This document shows positions 19,881 through 47,628 of a DNA stretch of 64,000 nt, piece after piece. The translations under genes were made by a program, and so were the position numbers. The notes under the pieces were generated by a model. It was not told the origin of the DNA, searched no databases, and saw nothing but the letters and a program-made list of their open reading frames with translations. The DNA lies in the IMG/VR virus record IMGVR_UViG_3300032236_001613, positions 124,001 to 188,000 of that record; one strand, written 5' to 3'. Position 1 is the stretch's first letter; each line of letters begins with the position of its first letter.

Positions 19881-21076
19881 TGCCTTTAGTTTTAGCATCA
19901 ACTACTGCTACGACATCTACAGTAAAGCTAATACACGGTAGCATTACTGTAGATTTGTTGCAAGCTCTTAATATGCAGCATCTGTATGATAGCATTATAA
20001 CTGCCAATCCTCCTGATCCCGGATGTACAGTTGCCCAGATGCAAATTCCTTTTATTGGATTAAATTTTAAAGATATAGGAATCATTAATCCCATTAGCGA
20101 TATTAAGCAGGCAATATCACGATTGTATGCTGCATTGCTAAGAGAAGTTATGAAACCTATTTGGGATATATTAAGAGCTATTCTTAAAGTACTAGAGAAA
20201 TTTATTAGTTTTGTAATAGATTTAAAGTTGCCTGTTTTAGATTTACATATTGATGATTTATTTGCACATGATCTCTATGATAAAATTAAAGCTGCCATTA
20301 CAAAACTTTATTATAAAGAAAAACAAAAAGTAATTGATATTTTAAATAAACTTAAAATTCCCTATCCATTTTTTATCGACTTTACTAGTATTGAAAAAGA
20401 AATTGAACACATTGTTGAAAAAATAATGCATAGTCTTTGGGATTCGTTATTCAAACTCATCTTTAAAATTATCGATATAATCGGAGTAGCATTAGAAGCA
20501 TTTGATATAGCTACGCATGGTGTACCAACTTTATCGGTAATTTGGAAAAAAATTGTCGAGGCAGTTTTATTAAAAGTATTAGAATTTTTTGCTGCCCCGT
20601 TTAGTATAGAAGATATCGAAAAAGCTATTAAAAAATTTGTTAAGGCTGAACTTAAAAAAGCAGTTGATGCTGCAAAGGCTGCAGTCGAAAAAGCAGTAGG
20701 GGCTGCATTAGCAGAAGCTCAAAAAGTTCTTGATGAAGCCGAAGCATTATATGAAAGAGCTGAACATGCTTATTATGAAATTATGCAAATGATTCATAAG
20801 TTCAAGTTACCAGTGTTTGGTTCACCATTTGATTGGCATCTTCCTTTAAACATCAAAGTTAATATTCCAAATTTAGATTTTAGCAAACTTGTTAATGATA
20901 TTAAAATCTGGATAAATCACTTTCTTGCTAATTTACTATTAAAATTTATGCAACTAATTGACGAAATTTTAAAAGCATTAGGACTTAATTTTATTATACC
21001 TAAAATTACTATTCCATTTATTCTAATGGAAGTTTGCGAAGAACCAATTAATATAAAACAGTTGCAATTTGCTTAA
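19880..21076 (+). CDS. Hypothetical amphipathic-helical protein
   Basis: 398-aa ORF coupled by TAATG; Ile/Leu/Lys-rich. Confidence 0.55.
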   Translation: MPLVLASTTATTSTVKLIHGSITVDLLQALNMQHLYDSIITANPPDPGCTVAQMQIPFIGLNFKDIGIINPISDIKQAISRLYAALLREVMKPIWDILRAILKVLEKFISFVIDLKLPVLDLHIDDLFAHDLYDKIKAAITKLYYKEKQKVIDILNKLKIPYPFFIDFTSIEKEIEHIVEKIMHSLWDSLFKLIFKIIDIIGVALEAFDIATHGVPTLSVIWKKIVEAVLLKVLEFFAAPFSIEDIEKAIKKFVKAELKKAVDAAKAAVEKAVGAALAEAQKVLDEAEALYERAEHAYYEIMQMIHKFKLPVFGSPFDWHLPLNIKVNIPNLDFSKLVNDIKIWINHFLANLLLKFMQLIDEILKALGLNFIIPKITIPFILMEVCEEPINIKQLQFA

Positions 21077-21109
21077 ATACTGTTATAATATTCTATAAAG
21101 GAGAATAAA

Positions 21110-21253
21110 ATGTTTACAGTTATTGTACTTTTAGTTATTGCTGGAGTATTAGTATACGTTGGAACACGTAATAAGGGATCTTCTTCGTCAGGTTCATCAT
21201 CAGGCGGTGCTAGTATGCCTGGTGTTGATAATACTAAAGAAAATAAGAATTAA
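21110..21253 (+). CDS. Small membrane protein (47 aa, absent from the ORF track)
   Basis: AAGGAG SD; extended -10 TGTTATAAT at 21081-21089; MFTVIVLLVIAGVLVYVG followed by a Ser/Gly-rich tail. Confidence 0.65.
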   Translation: MFTVIVLLVIAGVLVYVGTRNKGSSSSGSSSGGASMPGVDNTKENKN

Positions 21254-21632
21254 TGGTAGTAAACTCTTAAGTAAAGACGGTCTGGACGGGGAGTGCGACC
21301 CTCCCCCACCTCCACCATAGGTACATTTGATGCGAAAAATATTTGTAGTTGGGTTTTTAATGTTGTTGGCGGTCTTTGGTATATATAAGATTTTAAAATA
21401 TTCAGCTGACCATCCAACACAATGTAATATGTGGCACAGATGTTAAGTGTATCTATGTCGGGGGTGCGTAGTTTCGACAGAGTGTGTAATAGTCAAAGGG
21501 CTACTGGTGAGATGACTGACCTAATCAGCATAAACAAAAATAAATGCTAATGACAGTGTTTATGATGTTGCTATCGCTGCTTAATTGCAGTCTAGTAAAC
21601 AGAGTTTGATCACTCGGTAACAGAACGGTCAG
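21254..21632 (+). ncRNA. ssrA: Circularly permuted (two-piece) tmRNA: acceptor piece ending CCA at 21317, coding piece starting at 21460
   Basis: GGGGGTG (21460-21466) pairs with CACCTCC before ACCA (ends 21317), with the G3:U alanine determinant; T-arm GGGGAG-TGCGACC-CTCCCC; tag frame 21546-21584 reads ANDSVYDVAIAA-stop; the outer ends of both pieces are approximate. Confidence 0.93.
21330..21446 (+). CDS. 38-aa putative membrane peptide inside the tmRNA intervening segment
   Basis: MRKIFVVGFLMLLAVFGIYKILKYSADHPTQCNMWHRC; AGGT upstream; one transmembrane helix. Confidence 0.55.
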   Translation: MRKIFVVGFLMLLAVFGIYKILKYSADHPTQCNMWHRC

Positions 21633-21661
21633 ATAAAGGAGCTTCGGCTCCTTTATTTTTT
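21633..21661 (+). terminator. Intrinsic terminator after the tmRNA coding piece
   Basis: ATAAAGGAGC-TTCG-GCTCCTTTAT followed by a T run. Confidence 0.88.
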
Positions 21662-21699
21662 GTAATACAAATGTAATGTTTTTATAGTTAAATATTACT

Positions 21700-26212: not shown

Positions 26213-26591
26213 AATTACTTTAATCACACCACCTGACATTTTTCAAAACGATCAAGAAAGTATACTATTTGTTGATCTAACCACCGAAGATCAAGATGCT
26301 GTAATTAAATATTTTACTAACGTTGATTATAGTATTAATATCTATTTTTATAGTGGTGAAGCAAACGTACCTTGGTTAATGCATGCCCTTTCTTGTAGCA
26401 ATTATCGTTATATTAACTTAAATAACATGTCGGCTATAACAAGCTATTTGATAGCTTATATACTGTCAAAACAAGATGTATTTTACTCGATTGAGGATAA
26501 CAGTGTGGCTGAGATTTATAGTCACATTAATTTAAATCGTGTTAATAATGCTATTGAATTTTTAAAGAAGGTTTACAGTGACAACAAATAA
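26202..26591 (+). CDS. Hypothetical phage protein
   Basis: 129-aa ORF overlapping its neighbours. Confidence 0.55.
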   Translation: MPAKITLITPPDIFQNDQESILFVDLTTEDQDAVIKYFTNVDYSINIYFYSGEANVPWLMHALSCSNYRYINLNNMSAITSYLIAYILSKQDVFYSIEDNSVAEIYSHINLNRVNNAIEFLKKVYSDNK

Positions 26592-27822
26592 AAATCATGT
26601 TTGCGACTTTTGTCAAAAGGCAAAAGAAGATGTCGAAAAACTTATTGTCGGCGATAATGCTGCTATTTGTAACGACTGTGTAGAACTATGCATTAGTATC
26701 TTAGATGAAGATAAAGTAAAGAAATTCCCGTTAGGTGATAATAAAAATTTACTAAATCCTGTGCATATTAAAGAATATTTAGATCAGTATGTTATTGGTC
26801 AAGAAAATGCAAAAATTGCTCTTAGTGTAGCAGTATGCCAACATTTTAAAAGAGTGTTCACTGATGTTAAAGACATTGAAATTGAAAAAACTAATGTATT
26901 AATTTTAGGACCTACTGGGTGTGGTAAAACTATGCTAGCTAAAAAGCTAGCAGAATACCTTAACGTACCTTTTGCTATTTGTGATGCAACTGGCTTAACA
27001 GAAGCTGGATACGTGGGCGACGATGTTGAGAGCGTATTAAATCGTTTAATTTCAGCAGCCGACGGCGATATTGATAAAGCTAAACAAGGTATTGTTTATA
27101 TTGACGAAATTGATAAACTAAGTCGTAAAGGTGAAAACACTAGTCTTACACGAGATGTTGGTGGAGAAGGTGTTCAACAAGGTCTACTAAAAATGATCGA
27201 AGGATCAGTAATACGAGTACCTGCTGCAGATAAGCGTAAGCATCCTAGAGGCGACATGATTGAAGTTGATACAAAAAACATATTGTTTATATGTGGCGGT
27301 GCATTTGTTGGGTTAGATAAGATTATTAACCGTAGAAATAAATCAGGTGCAGTTGGATTCGGAGCATCAGTAACGTCAAATAAAGATACATTAGGTTATA
27401 GCGATGTAATTACTAAAGATTTAATTACTTTCGGACTGATACCTGAATTTATCGGACGTTTCGGATTAATTACACATGTTGACGAATTAAGTGTAGACGA
27501 TTTGGTAAAAATACTTAAAGAACCAAAAAACAGTTTAATCAGTCAATATAAACATTTATTTGCTATCGACGGCATTGAATTAGAATTTAAAGACGAAGCA
27601 CTAAAGGAGGTTGCAGAAAAAAGTAAACAACTTCAAACAAATGCTAGAGGCTTAAAAAACATTTTAGAAAAAATCTTATTAAATTATCAATTCGAAGCAA
27701 TGGATCTTGTTCAGCGAGGCCTCAGTAAAATTGTGATAAGTAAAGAAGCAGTTCATGGTAAATCTGCTGAATTAATTTTTAATAAAACAAAGAAGAAGTT
27801 AAATTATGAAAGTAATAGTTAA
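26578..27822 (+). CDS. clpX: ATP-dependent Clp protease ATP-binding subunit ClpX
   Basis: Zn finger CDFC..CNDC; GPTGCGKT; GYVG pore loop; IDEIDK; RKH loop; VGF ClpP-docking loop. Confidence 0.96.
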   Translation: MTTNKNHVCDFCQKAKEDVEKLIVGDNAAICNDCVELCISILDEDKVKKFPLGDNKNLLNPVHIKEYLDQYVIGQENAKIALSVAVCQHFKRVFTDVKDIEIEKTNVLILGPTGCGKTMLAKKLAEYLNVPFAICDATGLTEAGYVGDDVESVLNRLISAADGDIDKAKQGIVYIDEIDKLSRKGENTSLTRDVGGEGVQQGLLKMIEGSVIRVPAADKRKHPRGDMIEVDTKNILFICGGAFVGLDKIINRRNKSGAVGFGASVTSNKDTLGYSDVITKDLITFGLIPEFIGRFGLITHVDELSVDDLVKILKEPKNSLISQYKHLFAIDGIELEFKDEALKEVAEKSKQLQTNARGLKNILEKILLNYQFEAMDLVQRGLSKIVISKEAVHGKSAELIFNKTKKKLNYESNS

Positions 27823-28037: not shown

Positions 28038-28045
28038 AATTGTCT

Positions 28046-28570
28046 ATGCCAAAACACTTAATGGTCGATTTAGAAACACTATCGGTTGCTCCTGATGCAG
28101 TTATATTGACATTAGGAGCTGTTCATTTTGATCCTTTTGATAAAGGAATTATTAATGAACTTTATATTAAATTTGATCTCGACGATCAGGATCTTTTAAA
28201 AAGATCCATTGATCCACTAACATTAGATTGGTGGGCAAAGCAAGATTCTAAAATAATGGAAGAAGCATTTTCTCCAGATGGAAGAACCAAAGTATCTGAT
28301 GCTATCGATCAGTTCCACAAGTTTGCATGGGGGTGCGATAAATTTTGGAGTCACGGCGCAGTATTTGATCTTATGATCATAGAAAATTTATACCGTCAAC
28401 TAAAAAAATCATTTCCTTGGAACTTTTGGGATTTGAGAGACACAAGAACATTATTTGATCTAGGATTTAAGTCTAACATGACAAAAGACTCTATGCATAA
28501 TGCTCTTGAAGATGCTAAACGGCAGGCTATTGGTGTACAAAACGTTTATGCTCAAATAAAGAGAACATGA
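28046..28570 (+). CDS. DEDD-family 3'-5' exo(ribo)nuclease
   Basis: MVDLETL, SHGAVFD, RDTRT and HNALEDA motifs. Confidence 0.85.
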   Translation: MPKHLMVDLETLSVAPDAVILTLGAVHFDPFDKGIINELYIKFDLDDQDLLKRSIDPLTLDWWAKQDSKIMEEAFSPDGRTKVSDAIDQFHKFAWGCDKFWSHGAVFDLMIIENLYRQLKKSFPWNFWDLRDTRTLFDLGFKSNMTKDSMHNALEDAKRQAIGVQNVYAQIKRT

Positions 28571-36199: not shown

Positions 36200-36720
36200 C
36201 AACTAAGGCACACTCACTGGCATAAACATAGGCACATCAATCAACGCTTAAGCTCGCACCGGCTAATTTCGGGTGCCTATGATAACCGGACAACAAAGTC
36301 GCGGGGACAGAAATCCTGTGTGTTGACAGGAACTCAGCCACTACCCCTTCAGGGATGATGATGGAATATGCCTATATAATCCGTTTGGCTAAGATAAAAA
36401 TACTAAGGCTCTTTTGATCGCGGCTCTGTGAAAAAGATACAACCGCAAATACTACATATCTGCTAACATCGGTGTGTAGCGTTCCCGTTAGATTGAAGTT
36501 AGGAATAAGAAGTACAGGCTAACCGCTTCTGCGCAGCAATGCAATTTCCGAATGTTAGTGACCAACGAACTCAGGTAATAATCGTTAGAAAATCTTCGCC
36601 CTGTTTTGGGCGAAGTATGACATTAAAATCTAGGTAATCAATTCACTCTTAATAATTTTTCTCTTTCTTATAAAAGGTGATGAGCGCGAGCGAAATCACG
36701 GGCGAATCCTTTCGCCCCTT
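36200..36720 (+). ncRNA. Candidate large structured ncRNA (family unassigned)
   Basis: About 520 nt with no ORF, more GC-rich than its flanks, many hairpins (e.g. CATAGGCAC/GTGCCTATG, TCCTGT/ACAGGA, CTTCGCCC/GGGCGAAG). Confidence 0.5.
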
Positions 36721-45600: not shown

Positions 45601-47628
45601 ATGTTTAAAAAAATTCTGTTGAGTCCGTGGACTGCACTACTTACACTTTTTTTAGTAGTTGCTGTTAGAGTGGTCGATCCTAGCTTTGTTGAAAGTGTGC
45701 GCCTTAGATATTTTGATACTTTAATTACAAATAAAGCATCTACGGCTAATAATATTTTTACTGTTAATATTGACGAAGCTGCATTAGATCGTTACGGTCA
45801 ATGGCCATTACCTCGCAACGTATATGCTGACATTATACAAGATTTGTATAATCGTCATGCAGGATTAGTTGTATTAGATGTTGTAATGTCTGAAAAAGAT
45901 CGTATGGGCGGCGATTCTGCATTAGCTGATATGATGAAACAGTATCCAGTAGTATTAGCTAACATTCCAGCAGAAAAAACTAAAAACGATCCGCGTGCAC
46001 CCGGAAGTGCAGTAATGGGTGCAGATCATTTAGATCGTATTGTACAATATCCGGGACTAATTGCTAATATTCCTGCATTAGAAGAAAATGCTGTAGGTAT
46101 AGGCAGTGTAAACACTATGCCAGAAATTGATGGAGTTAATCGTCGTGTACCTTTAATTGCTGCAATTAACGGAAAACTATACCCGTCATTAGCCATGGAA
46201 GCACTACGTGTTGCAGGTAATGATACTACATTTCAAGTTAAGCTTAACGAAAATGGTGTAGAGAAAATGCGTATACCTGCATTCGGACCTATCGCAACAG
46301 ATAGCCTAGGACGCATTTGGGTTGACTGGAGTCAACAAAATCGACAGATTTCTATAACAGATTTACCTAAAGACTTTAATGGTGCTGTAGTTATAGTAGG
46401 CCCTACTGCTGCAGGTATTGCTAATCCTGTTCCGACTTCTCGAGGCGCGGTTTATCCTCAAGATATGCAAGCTGCAGTATTAGGTACAATGATAAATGGC
46501 GTAACAATACAAAGACCCGATTATGCAGACGGACTAGAAATCGTTGCTATTTTATTAGCAAGTGTTATACTGTTAATTCTAACAAGGTGGGTTTATGCAG
46601 GATTGGCGGCAGTCGTTATTTTACTGGGTTCAGGAGCTTTTGGCAGTTATTATCTTTTTAGCCATTACCTTTGGCTTTTTGATGCTAGTGCTTTTGTTGC
46701 TGCGATCGTCCTTGTGTCACTCCATGCCTATGGAGTTAAATTCGTTAGTGAATATTTGCAGAAGCAACAAATAAAGAAACAGTTTGGCACATACTTGAGT
46801 CCGGCAATGGTTGAAAAATTACAAAAAAATCCCGAACTATTAAAGTTGGGCGGTGAATCACGCGAACTTAGTATTATGTTTACGGACGTTCGAGGATTTA
46901 CAGGAATTAGCGAACACTATGGCAAGGATGTACAGGGACTTACTAAGATTATGAATCGCTATATGACTGCCATGACTGCAAAAATCATAGAGAATGAAGG
47001 TACACTAGATAAGTACATTGGTGATGCACAAATGGCATTCTGGAACGCACCGTTAGACGATGCTGCCCACGCTAAACATGCTGTAAAAACTGCATTAGCT
47101 ATGTTAAAAGATTTGGAGAATTTTAATGCAGAAATCGCTAAAGAAGGTGTTCCAGAGTTTGGAATGGGGCTTGGCATTAACACTGATACTGTCGTGGTTG
47201 GCAATATGGGGAGTAGTCAGCGTTTTGATTATACTTGTCTTGGGGACGGCGTTAATCTTGCGAGTCGTTTGGAAGGACAAAGTAAGCCCTATGGTGTCAA
47301 GATTATTCTCGGGCCGAAAACAGCAGAATATGTAATGGACGAATATCCTTTAATCGAATTAGATTTAATTGCTGTTAAAGGTAAAAAAGAACCTGTTAAG
47401 ATCTATACTGTAGCACCGATTGACGATGCTATGGCTTGGCTATTACACGAAAAGTTCTTAGATGCCTACAGAGACGGTATGTGGGTAGGTGCACGTTTCT
47501 ATGCTGAAGAATTGCGTGACAAAGGATGGAATGGCGAGATGTACAAGTATTACGAAATGATGCTAGAGCGTATGCAAGGAGAAGTTCCGTTAGATTGGGA
47601 CGGTGTATTTAGAGCCACTAGCAAATAA
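45601..47628 (+). CDS. CHASE2-domain class III adenylate/guanylate cyclase
   Basis: YGQWPLPR, DGVNRR (CHASE2); transmembrane helices; MFTDVRGFT, DKYIGDAQMAFW, GDGVNLASRLE. Confidence 0.93.
   Translation: MFKKILLSPWTALLTLFLVVAVRVVDPSFVESVRLRYFDTLITNKASTANNIFTVNIDEAALDRYGQWPLPRNVYADIIQDLYNRHAGLVVLDVVMSEKDRMGGDSALADMMKQYPVVLANIPAEKTKNDPRAPGSAVMGADHLDRIVQYPGLIANIPALEENAVGIGSVNTMPEIDGVNRRVPLIAAINGKLYPSLAMEALRVAGNDTTFQVKLNENGVEKMRIPAFGPIATDSLGRIWVDWSQQNRQISITDLPKDFNGAVVIVGPTAAGIANPVPTSRGAVYPQDMQAAVLGTMINGVTIQRPDYADGLEIVAILLASVILLILTRWVYAGLAAVVILLGSGAFGSYYLFSHYLWLFDASAFVAAIVLVSLHAYGVKFVSEYLQKQQIKKQFGTYLSPAMVEKLQKNPELLKLGGESRELSIMFTDVRGFTGISEHYGKDVQGLTKIMNRYMTAMTAKIIENEGTLDKYIGDAQMAFWNAPLDDAAHAKHAVKTALAMLKDLENFNAEIAKEGVPEFGMGLGINTDTVVVGNMGSSQRFDYTCLGDGVNLASRLEGQSKPYGVKIILGPKTAEYVMDEYPLIELDLIAVKGKKEPVKIYTVAPIDDAMAWLLHEKFLDAYRDGMWVGARFYAEELRDKGWNGEMYKYYEMMLERMQGEVPLDWDGVFRATSK

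What the first reader, a model, noticed from the sequence alone, without database searches (positions are those of the whole stretch)
21254..21661. Circularly permuted two-piece tmRNA in a phage
Seen: the T-arm and the CACCTCC-A-CCA 3' end (to 21317) come BEFORE the 5' acceptor strand GGGGGTG (21460-66). The two strands form a 7-bp acceptor stem with G3:U. The coding piece carries ANDSVYDVAIAA-stop (21546-21584) and ends at a terminator. Established: permuted ssrA occurs in Alphaproteobacteria, one betaproteobacterial lineage and some marine cyanobacteria. One-piece tmRNA finders and ORF callers often miss it. Inference: it is a host-lineage clue, and the phage brings its own ribosome-rescue and tagging RNA.
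Basis: partly seen in the sequence, partly recalled or inferred. Interest (0 to 1): 0.78.

Follow-up and report, generated by a model that had tools for sequence, protein, structure and literature searches.

The report
Two-piece tmRNA gene in jumbo phage
A 328-kb freshwater phage carries a complete, circularly permuted (two-piece) ribosome-rescue RNA gene: a kind of gene already known from phages, but here with an unusual six-pair T stem that hides it from the standard finder and a spacer that seems to hold a tiny protein gene.

Summary
Rfam calls a permuted tmRNA at 21255-21584 (RF04321, 120 bits, E 7e-23) and the beta-type model covers 21211-21658. The record is a 328-kb phage with a T4-type capsid from freshwater metagenomes. 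The acceptor stem (G3:U, A73, encoded CCA), the helices joining the two pieces, pseudoknot 1, the tag ANDSVYDVAIAA and the terminator are all present. Relatives support them with compensatory changes, and the tag codons differ mostly at synonymous sites.

Two-piece tmRNAs in phages are already published, so the core finding is a new member of a known kind. I found three additions.
- The gene belongs to a family in over 100 IMG/VR contigs whose 5' motif I found in no permuted bacterial gene.
- Its clade has a 6-bp T stem, and this, not the spacer, is why ARAGORN misses it.
- The 142-nt excised spacer is 82% filled by a 38-codon membrane-like ORF. Near-identical tmRNA genes carry a 33-nt hairpin there instead.

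Related phages hold a well-conserved 50-aa gene in the same slot. That the window's ORF is coding is plausible, not proven. The phage also encodes ClpX and ClpP but no SmpB. The host-lineage clue is soft.

The parts
21062..21089 (+). Sigma-70-like promoter (TTGCAA, 16 nt, TATAAT, with TG before the second hexamer). It is the likely start of the transcription unit.
   Evidence: (10 of 12 matches). The number of promoter-like sites in the region is not above chance, so this is a candidate only.
21110..21253 (+). 47-aa small membrane-type ORF with AAGGAG 8 nt upstream. Its stop codon abuts the tmRNA gene.
   Evidence: Relatives L133 and L135 also have small hydrophobic ORFs ending at or inside the first tmRNA helix.
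21254..21317 (+). Acceptor piece. 5' strands of the inter-piece helices: 21255-21260 and 21277-21284. T stem: 21288-21293 with 21301-21306 (6 bp). T loop TGCGACC: 21294-21300. 3' acceptor strand: 21307-21313. A: 21314. CCA: 21315-21317.
   Evidence: Rfam alignment, direct reading, pair counts.
21318..21459 (+). Intervening segment of 142 nt, removed from the mature RNA. It forms a long hairpin whose closing stem is 21318-21331 with 21442-21455.
   Evidence: Fold -33.6 kcal/mol, z -2.3. A near-identical tmRNA gene in run X2, and in L133/L134, has a 33-nt hairpin here instead.
21330..21446 (+). 38-codon ORF inside the intervening segment: MRKIFVVGFLMLLAVFGIYKILKYSADHPTQCNMWHRC. It has one membrane-type helix and an AGGT 8 nt upstream.
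   Evidence: Shuffles reach this ORF length in 75 of 5000 trials. The ORF is intact in a copy about 90% identical, with 6 synonymous and 6 non-synonymous changes and no indel. No homologue was found in the protein database.
21460..21661 (+). Coding piece. 5' acceptor strand: 21460-21466. 3' strands of the inter-piece helices: 21478-21485 and 21500-21505. Pseudoknot 1: 21506-21528. Tag frame: 21546-21584. Conserved hairpin: 21606-21632. Terminator hairpin: 21631-21658, followed by a T run.
26578..27822 (+). Phage ClpX homologue, the unfoldase that recognises ssrA tags. It lies 5 kb downstream. The matching ClpP gene is outside the window, at genome 211494-212036.
   Evidence: Pfam zf-C4_ClpX, AAA_2 and ClpB_D2-small. 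Motifs GPTGCGKT, GYVG, RKH, VGF and two CxxC. ClpP at 261 bits.

Best explanation
This is a working, phage-encoded, circularly permuted ssrA gene of the betaproteobacterial structural type.

Proposed mechanism (inferred unless marked otherwise):
1. One transcript probably runs from a promoter near 21062-21089, through a small ORF and the whole gene, to the terminator at 21631-21665.
2. Host tRNA-processing enzymes cut it. RNase P cuts before G21460. 3' trimming goes back to CCA at 21317.
3. This gives a 64-nt acceptor piece and a coding piece of about 200 nt, held together by the acceptor stem and two covarying helices.
4. Host AlaRS charges the RNA, using G3:U and A73.
5. Host SmpB and EF-Tu deliver it to stalled ribosomes. 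The phage has no SmpB or AlaRS of its own.
6. Translation resumes at GCT 21546 and adds (A)ANDSVYDVAIAA.
7. ClpXP degrades the tagged chains. The phage supplies its own ClpX and ClpP.

The likely benefit is to keep ribosomes free and recycle amino acids while host mRNAs are being destroyed during infection.

The excised 142-nt spacer is a swappable slot. Here it most likely carries a small membrane-protein gene.

What is shown: the sequence, the structure, the covariation, the selection on the tag and the gene content. What is inferred: processing, charging, tagging and translation of the spacer ORF.
For: Identity and structure:
- The Rfam hits are well above threshold.
- In the 10 distinct members of the window's clade, all 7 acceptor pairs and all 6 T-stem pairs form, and G3:U never varies.
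- Compensatory double changes occur in the inner inter-piece helix (C:G to U:A), in three pairs of the outer helix (GGUAGU/GCUACU against AGCGU/GCGCU), and in both stems of pseudoknot 1.
- The tag codons differ from relatives at 5-8 synonymous against 2-4 non-synonymous codons. The pattern AND(S)xY(D)xAxAA is kept.
- The terminator matches the 3' hairpin of the beta model.

Genomic setting:
- The gene sits mid-genome in a T4-type jumbo phage whose capsid is 68-71% identical to GAP32/CBB-type phages.
- ClpX with intact motifs and ClpP are present. SmpB, SspB, AlaRS and ArfB are absent.
- More than 100 IMG/VR contigs carry related permuted genes.
- Phage two-piece tmRNAs are documented (PMC9004378).

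Spacer:
- The ORF fills 82% of the spacer (P about 0.015 by shuffling).
- The ORF is kept open in a 10%-divergent copy that sits in a different tmRNA background. A near-identical tmRNA gene has a 33-nt hairpin instead.
- Related long spacers hold a 50-aa ORF with 19 homologue clusters, a gap-free alignment, 14 synonymous against 15 non-synonymous codon changes, and a confident fold.
Against: - No expression data: no RNA run holding the sequence could be listed. Processing, charging and tagging are therefore all untested.
- The T arm departs from the canon. It has 6 pairs instead of 5, and G where the universal U55 should be. A 13-pair acceptor/T stack might alter EF-Tu or SmpB binding.
- The beta-model score (89 bits) is only just above its threshold of 84.
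- For the spacer ORF: no homologue was found in 5.8 billion proteins or in IMG/VR. The synonymous excess is marginal (P 0.05-0.07), and another frame scores nearly as well. The Shine-Dalgarno-like AGGT is weak and sits inside the closing stem. The spacer also folds as a hairpin, as the non-coding spacers do.
Confidence: 0.85

Rival explanations
1. The RNA is a decoy or inhibitor. It binds host SmpB, AlaRS or ribosomes and blocks or redirects host trans-translation rather than performing normal rescue. A CDS-less mini-tmRNA from mycobacteriophage DS6A is reported to do this.
For: - The T arm is atypical: a 6-bp stem and G at loop position 55.
- The phage has no SmpB.
- PMC11915505 cites a phage mini-tmRNA that inhibits the endogenous tmRNA.
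- A 90-nt CDS-less element with the same 6-bp T stem exists in another viral contig, L003.
Against: A pure decoy needs no tag frame. Here the tag peptide is under clear purifying selection, and pseudoknot 1 and the resume-codon context are conserved with compensatory changes. The phage's own ClpX and ClpP fit real tagging.
Confidence: 0.07
2. The gene is a passenger or decaying copy picked up from a host. An example would be a remnant of integration at ssrA, with no role in the phage.
For: tmRNA genes are common prophage attachment sites, and fragments of them occur in phage genomes (PMC9004378).
Against: - The gene is complete, and both pieces pair.
- It lies mid-genome in a T4-type phage.
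- It belongs to a family of over 100 viral contigs with covariation and tag selection.
- No bacterial species genome holds a permuted gene with its 5' motif.
Confidence: 0.04
3. The 142-nt spacer is only a non-coding processing hairpin, and its ORF is a by-product. This rival concerns the spacer alone, not the tmRNA.
For: - All shorter spacers are hairpins with covarying closing stems and no ORF.
- The window's spacer folds with z -2.3, and its start codon and AGGT lie in the stem.
- No homologue was found.
- The synonymous excess is marginal, and frame +1 scores 5 synonymous against 7 non-synonymous.
Against: - ORF length is reached in only 1.5% of shuffles.
- Every independent spacer of 141 nt or more in the family is 82-91% ORF, and no spacer of 97 nt or less has an ORF longer than 24 codons (one 98-nt spacer, L049, is 77% filled by a 24-codon ORF).
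- One of these ORFs is a clearly conserved protein.
- The window's ORF stays open, with no indel, across 10% divergence. Its hydrophobic helix changes only V to I and G to V.
Confidence: 0.4

Closest known systems
Betaproteobacterial two-piece tmRNA (Rfam RF01850 beta_tmRNA; general model RF04321 tmRNA_permuted)
   Same: Same gene order: acceptor piece with T arm and CCA, then spacer, then coding piece. Same 7-bp acceptor stem with G3:U, two inter-piece helices, pseudoknot 1 before the resume codon, AND...AA tag, one conserved 3' hairpin and a terminator. It scores above both gathering thresholds.
   Different: It is carried by a phage. The T stem has 6 pairs, with an extra A-U. The T loop is UGCGACC instead of UUCGAUU. 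The tag has 12 codons and ends in AIAA. The spacer is 142 nt and holds an ORF. Its 5' motif GGGGGTGNNTAGTTTCGACAG occurs in no permuted gene among 185,579 species genomes.
Phage-encoded two-piece tmRNAs already described: Methylophilales phage Melnitz, pelagimyophages, cyanophages (Buchholz et al. 2022, PMC9004378)
   Same: A complete permuted ssrA in aquatic T4-type myophages, with no SmpB reported. The proposed role is to maintain hijacked translation or to recycle proteins.
   Different: Melnitz's gene is alpha-type and associated with a glutamine riboswitch. That survey used ARAGORN, which cannot see the window's clade. There is no blastn match between the window's gene and any of 50,697 deposited phage genomes. 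A main-clade relative also matched none, apart from one 68-nt stretch in Xanthomonas phage Rb1.
Sinorhizobium phage Phosso, a cultured jumbo phage whose capsid is 69.5% identical
   Same: A related jumbo myophage with a permuted tmRNA gene and a long spacer (410 nt).
   Different: Its gene is alpha-type (RF01849, 108 bits), matching its alphaproteobacterial host. It is not annotated in the record. Its spacer has no clear ORF.
Unusual spacer contents noted in the 2025 tmRNA database (PMC11915505)
   Same: The intervening sequence of a permuted gene can carry foreign content. A tRNA-Ala gene in one case and a repetitive element in another are reported.
   Different: No protein-coding ORF in a spacer is mentioned there, nor in the 20 papers returned by my library search. 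Here the content is a small ORF, and in related phages a conserved 50-aa protein.

Membership tests
Permuted (two-piece) tmRNA | Gene order permuted: T arm, 3' acceptor strand and CCA lie upstream of the 5' acceptor strand | tested here: met
   CCA ends at 21317 and G1 is at 21460.
Permuted (two-piece) tmRNA | Covariance-model score above the curated threshold | tested here: met
   RF04321 scores 120.2 bits against 47, E 6.8e-23.
Permuted (two-piece) tmRNA | tRNA-Ala identity set: 7-bp acceptor stem, G3:U70, discriminator A, CCA | tested here: met
   All 7 pairs form in 10 of 10 clade members, G3:U never varies, and A is at 21314.
Permuted (two-piece) tmRNA | Canonical T arm: 5-bp stem and a 7-nt loop of the form U-U-C-R-A-N-N | tested here: not met
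   The stem has 6 pairs (GGGGAG with CUCCCC) and the loop is UGCGACC. Both are conserved in the clade. G at the second loop position is also the rule in the wider phage family. This is a deviation within an otherwise complete tRNA-like domain. It lowers confidence in function somewhat, not in homology.
Permuted (two-piece) tmRNA | Helices that hold the two pieces together, supported by covariation | tested here: met
   Inner helix: C:G changes to U:A. Outer helix: three compensatory pairs between subclades.
Permuted (two-piece) tmRNA | Pseudoknot 1 upstream of the resume codon | tested here: met
   Stem 1: G:C changes to C:G. Stem 2: U:A changes to G:C and G:C to A:U. The counts come from my own alignment, not from a structure-aware one.
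Permuted (two-piece) tmRNA | Tag frame that starts with an Ala codon and ends in hydrophobic-A-A then stop, under peptide-level selection | tested here: met
   ANDSVYDVAIAA*, with 5-8 synonymous against 2-4 non-synonymous codon differences from relatives. ARAGORN calls the same tag in the control.
Permuted (two-piece) tmRNA | Processing into two RNAs, alanylation, SmpB binding and tagging activity | not testable with these tools
   No RNA run could be listed. This needs bench work.
Beta-type subfamily (RF01850) | Best-scoring clan member is beta_tmRNA, above its threshold | tested here: met
   89 bits against 84 in the window, which is marginal. Relatives score 85-130 bits. One subclade (L054) scores best with the alpha model.
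Beta-type subfamily (RF01850) | Occurs in a betaproteobacterial (Burkholderiales) genome or its phage | tested here: inconclusive
   The host is unknown.
- In favour: the sequence comes from freshwater metagenomes, and a Polynucleobacter-1 RNA lies in the window.
- Against relying on it: no bacterial permuted gene shares the 5' motif, and Melnitz is a published mismatch.
ClpX (neighbouring gene 26578-27822) | N-terminal zinc finger, Walker A, GYVG pore loop, RKH loop, IGF-type ClpP-docking loop | tested here: met
   Pfam domains. Motifs CDFC and CNDC, GPTGCGKT, GYVG, RKH, VGF. Activity was not tested.

The most novel reading that the evidence does not exclude
In phage permuted tmRNA genes, the spacer discarded during maturation serves as a slot for small protein genes.

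On this reading the precursor is both an RNA-gene transcript and an mRNA. The ORF sits exactly in the loop of the conserved spacer hairpin. The cassettes are gained, lost and exchanged between different tmRNA genes by recombination in the conserved acceptor and T-arm flanks.

The window's 38-aa membrane-type ORF would be one such cassette. The 50-aa family in related phages would be another. The 50-aa gene is found in at least five tmRNA backgrounds and once directly upstream of the gene.
Probability: 0.5. Interest if true: 0.7.

Novelty: new variant of a known kind. Interest (0 to 1): 0.5.

Why it matters
**Annotation.** A whole clade of phage tmRNA genes is invisible to ARAGORN because of one extra base pair. 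ARAGORN is the tool behind the published counts of phage tmRNAs, so those counts are too low. Even a cultured relative (phage Phosso) carries an unannotated permuted tmRNA.

**Phage biology.** This jumbo phage carries the RNA that tags stalled proteins and both parts of the protease that destroys tagged proteins. It lacks SmpB. That points to a specific dependence on the host, which could be tested.

**RNA biology.** The 6-bp T stem gives a 13-pair acceptor/T stack. The G at the normally invariant U55 is also conserved. Both are natural variants that can be used to probe what AlaRS, EF-Tu and SmpB tolerate.

**Gene organisation.** If the spacer ORFs are translated, a discarded piece of an RNA precursor doubles as an mRNA. 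I did not find this arrangement described.

Tried and rejected
- ARAGORN on the window and on the whole genome found no tmRNA. I first blamed the 142-nt spacer. That is wrong: ARAGORN finds relatives with 175-nt spacers and misses clade members with 33-nt spacers. The in-silico control pins the miss on the T stem.
- blastn of the gene against 50,697 phage genomes gave no match. A main-clade relative matched only a 68-nt stretch in Xanthomonas phage Rb1.
- The search for bacterial donors found only 10 hits. All are one-piece tmRNAs of Omnitrophota, CPR and Elusimicrobia. I could not sample Burkholderiales genomes directly.
- I looked for homologues of the 38-aa ORF in four ways. An exact pattern and a codon-degenerate pattern in IMG/VR gave none. 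Pfam gave none. The protein atlas gave only weak small-membrane-protein look-alikes scoring 0.74.
- No RNA run could be listed as expression evidence.
- The cross-clade pair counts on a plain MAFFT alignment were out of register and are not used. Only the counts within the window's clade are used.
- A fold search with the 50-aa spacer protein gave no significant match. The best E-value was 0.38. The antitoxin ATfaRel2 at TM 0.68 is a lead only.
- The paper by Sharkady and Williams (2004) is not held, so the exact betaproteobacterial range of permuted ssrA was not checked.

Full report
**1. The observation**

- T arm: 21288-21306.
- 3' acceptor strand CACCTCC: 21307-21313.
- Discriminator A: 21314.
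- CCA: 21315-21317.
- 5' acceptor strand GGGGGTG: 21460-21466, that is, 142 nt downstream of the CCA.

The two strands make seven pairs with G3:U. The frame GCT AAT GAC AGT GTT TAT GAT GTT GCT ATC GCT GCT TAA lies at 21546-21584. A 12-pair hairpin with a T run closes the gene at 21631-21665.

Rfam confirms the call. RF04321 (tmRNA_permuted) matches 21255-21584 at 120.2 bits against a gathering score of 47, E 6.8e-23. RF01850 (beta_tmRNA) matches 21211-21658 at 89 bits against 84.

**2. The genome**

The window is bases 124001-188000 of an IMG/VR virus record of 328,068 bp. It has 37% G+C and is estimated 92% complete.
- It encodes a T4-type Gp23 capsid protein and a large terminase.
- It carries 27 tRNA genes.
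- The capsid protein is 68-71% identical to those of GAP32/CBB-type jumbo myophages, Vibrio phage 2.275.O and Sinorhizobium phage Phosso.
- The sequence recurs in freshwater and lake metagenomes.

So "in a phage" is right. The gene lies mid-genome, among ribonucleotide reductase genes, a metallophosphoesterase gene and a ClpX gene.

**3. Is the RNA built to work?**

I collected relatives with short DNA patterns.
- 114 IMG/VR contigs match the 5' end of the coding piece. In 82 of them both pieces lie in the fetched DNA, giving 53 distinct genes.
- 10 IMG/VR contigs and 4 metagenome contigs carry the window's own T-arm variant.

In the 10 distinct genes of the window's clade:
- All seven acceptor pairs and all six T-stem pairs form, and G3:U never varies.
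- The inner inter-piece helix shows C:G changing to U:A.
- The outer helix changes at three pairs together (GGUAGU/GCUACU against AGCGU/GCGCU).
- Both stems of pseudoknot 1 show compensatory changes.

The tag frame differs from its relatives mostly at synonymous sites: 5-8 synonymous against 2-4 non-synonymous codons out of 12. The peptide pattern A-N-D-(S)-x-Y-(D)-x-A-x-A-A is kept.

These are the signatures of an RNA that is used both as a tRNA-like molecule and as a message. Processing, charging and tagging themselves were not testable. No RNA run holding the sequence could be listed.

**4. What is unusual in the tRNA-like part**

The clade has an extra A-U pair in the T stem, making 6 pairs. 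Its T loop is UGCGACC. Most of the wider phage family also has G at the second loop position (GTGCGAATC), where tRNAs and bacterial tmRNAs have U.

ARAGORN misses every member of the window's clade, whatever the spacer length (33 to 142 nt). It finds most of the main clade, including genes with 175-nt spacers. When the extra pair is removed in silico, as a software control only, ARAGORN calls the window's gene as permuted with the tag ANDSVYDVAIAA*.

**5. The spacer**

Spacers in the family run from 32 to 175 nt.
- Short spacers are hairpins. Their closing stems covary, and none of 97 nt or less has an ORF longer than 9 codons.
- Two intermediate spacers (98 nt in L049, 119 nt in L022) each hold a 24-codon ORF, filling 77% and 63% of the spacer.
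- Every independent spacer of 141 nt or more is 82-91% filled by one ORF.

The window's spacer keeps a closing stem (21318-31 with 21442-55; -33.6 kcal/mol, z -2.3). Its loop is a 38-codon ORF at 21330-21446. The product has a basic N-terminus, one hydrophobic helix and a Cys-containing tail.

Evidence that the window's ORF is coding:
- Shuffled spacers reach that ORF length in 75 of 5000 trials.
- In run X2, a contig whose two tmRNA pieces differ from the window at 0-1 positions carries a 33-nt hairpin instead of the 142 nt. The same hairpin is in L133 and L134.
- Also in run X2, a different tmRNA gene (L118-like) carries a copy of the 142-nt spacer about 90% identical. Its ORF is intact, with no indel and 6 synonymous against 6 non-synonymous changes.
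- The synonymous excess in that copy is marginal (P about 0.05-0.07), and another frame does almost as well.
- No homologue of the peptide was found anywhere.

The related 175-nt spacers give much stronger evidence.
- Their 50-aa ORF has 19 homologue clusters at 70-98% identity, all full length. The alignment is gap-free with 23 invariant columns.
- A pair of copies 70% identical differs at 14 synonymous against 15 non-synonymous codons.
- The predicted fold is confident: beta-beta-alpha-beta, pLDDT 92.
- The ORF lies inside the spacer of at least five different tmRNA backgrounds, and once directly upstream of the gene.

I conclude that protein genes nested in the spacers of phage permuted tmRNA genes are real in relatives, and plausible (about 60%) for the window. 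The 2025 tmRNA database paper mentions only a tRNA gene and a repeat element in such spacers.

**6. Mechanism**

A promoter-like site lies at 21062-21089. After it comes a small ORF with a strong ribosome-binding site (21110-21253), then the tmRNA gene. One transcript probably covers everything up to the terminator.

By analogy with Caulobacter and other two-piece tmRNAs (established knowledge), RNase P and 3' trimming would release the two pieces. The phage has no SmpB, SspB, AlaRS or ArfB, so it must rely on the host for charging and delivery.

It does have the following:
- A ClpX with an intact zinc finger, Walker A motif, GYVG, RKH and VGF loops, at 26578-27822.
- A ClpP, at genome 211494-212036.

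The most likely role is to keep ribosomes free and to dispose of truncated proteins while host mRNA is degraded. This is an inference.

**7. Host clue**

In favour of a betaproteobacterial host:
- Rfam subtyping says beta-type for the window and nearly all relatives.
- The window also holds a Polynucleobacter-1 RNA.
- The phage is from fresh water.
- Among five cultured capsid relatives, only the phage of an alphaproteobacterium has a permuted tmRNA, and it is alpha-type. The four phages of Gammaproteobacteria have none.

Against relying on it:
- The family's 5' motif occurs in no permuted gene among 185,579 species genomes.
- Phage Melnitz carries an alpha-type gene while infecting OM43.

The clue is reasonable but soft.

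**8. Novelty**

Phage two-piece tmRNAs are published. A survey of 18,146 phage genomes counted 53 (PMC9004378). The core finding is therefore a new member of a known kind. The 6-bp T stem, the clade that ARAGORN cannot see, the phage-specific family and the ORF-bearing, swappable spacer make it a new variant worth a short follow-up.

Noticed in passing
window 36251-36391 (+): Full-length match to the Rfam Polynucleobacter-1 RNA (RF01718): 91 bits against a gathering score of 37. It lies in an intergenic gap of the phage genome. An RNA motif known from Polynucleobacter and aquatic metagenomes is thus carried by a jumbo phage. It is also a soft host hint.
   Followed up: no
window 26578-27822 (+); genome C1:211494-212036 (L002): The phage encodes its own ClpX, with all hallmark motifs, and its own ClpP. 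These are the two parts of the protease that degrades ssrA-tagged proteins. It has no SmpB, SspB, AlaRS or ArfB.
   Followed up: partly
window 28040-28570 (+): An Rv2179c-like 3'-5' exoribonuclease (Pfam PF16473, E 9e-34) lies just after ClpX. An enzyme of this type could trim RNA 3' ends such as the CCA end of the acceptor piece. This is pure speculation.
   Followed up: no
window 45601-47628 (+): A 675-aa protein with a CHASE2 sensor domain and an adenylate/guanylate cyclase domain. It matches a phage family of unknown function over its full length (phrog_35576, E 8e-252).
   Followed up: no
L003 7403-7492 (-), contig IMGVR_UViG_3300037484_000333: A 90-nt tmRNA-like element without a tag frame. 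It has the acceptor stem GGGGGUG/CACCUCC, ACCA, and the same 6-bp T stem with the extra A-U pair. It recalls the CDS-less mini-tmRNA of mycobacteriophage DS6A.
   Followed up: no
L145 1458-2147 (-), which is Sinorhizobium phage Phosso PV764938.1, about 349553-350242: An alpha-type permuted tmRNA gene (RF01849 108 bits, RF04321 113 bits) with a 410-nt spacer. It lies in a stretch of the deposited record that has no annotated feature.
   Followed up: partly
L017 9669-9818; L132 1501-1653; L155, L157, L160, L161; L159 401-553: A conserved 50-aa basic protein (MKYKIVVK...). It is encoded inside the spacer of at least five different phage permuted tmRNA genes, and once immediately upstream of the acceptor piece. 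The AlphaFold model has pLDDT 92 and a beta-beta-alpha-beta fold. There is no significant structural match. It has no homologue in the window's genome.
   Followed up: partly
window 21277-21539, as seen in run X4: A 3761-nt contig has the window's flanks and an identical tag region, but 125 unlike letters in place of these 263 nt (T arm, spacer, 5' acceptor strand, inter-piece helices, pseudoknot 1). That is too short for a normal permuted core plus a spacer. It is unexplained.
   Followed up: no
L004-L117 (IMG/VR): Most genes of the phage family have the T loop GTGCGAATC, with G where tRNAs and bacterial tmRNAs have the conserved U55. Only a minority keep GTTCGATTC.
   Followed up: partly
window 21110-21253 (+): A 47-aa membrane-type ORF with a Ser/Gly-rich tail, a strong ribosome-binding site and a promoter-like site upstream. 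It ends one base before the tmRNA gene. Relatives also have small hydrophobic ORFs abutting or overlapping the first tmRNA helix (L133, L135).
   Followed up: partly
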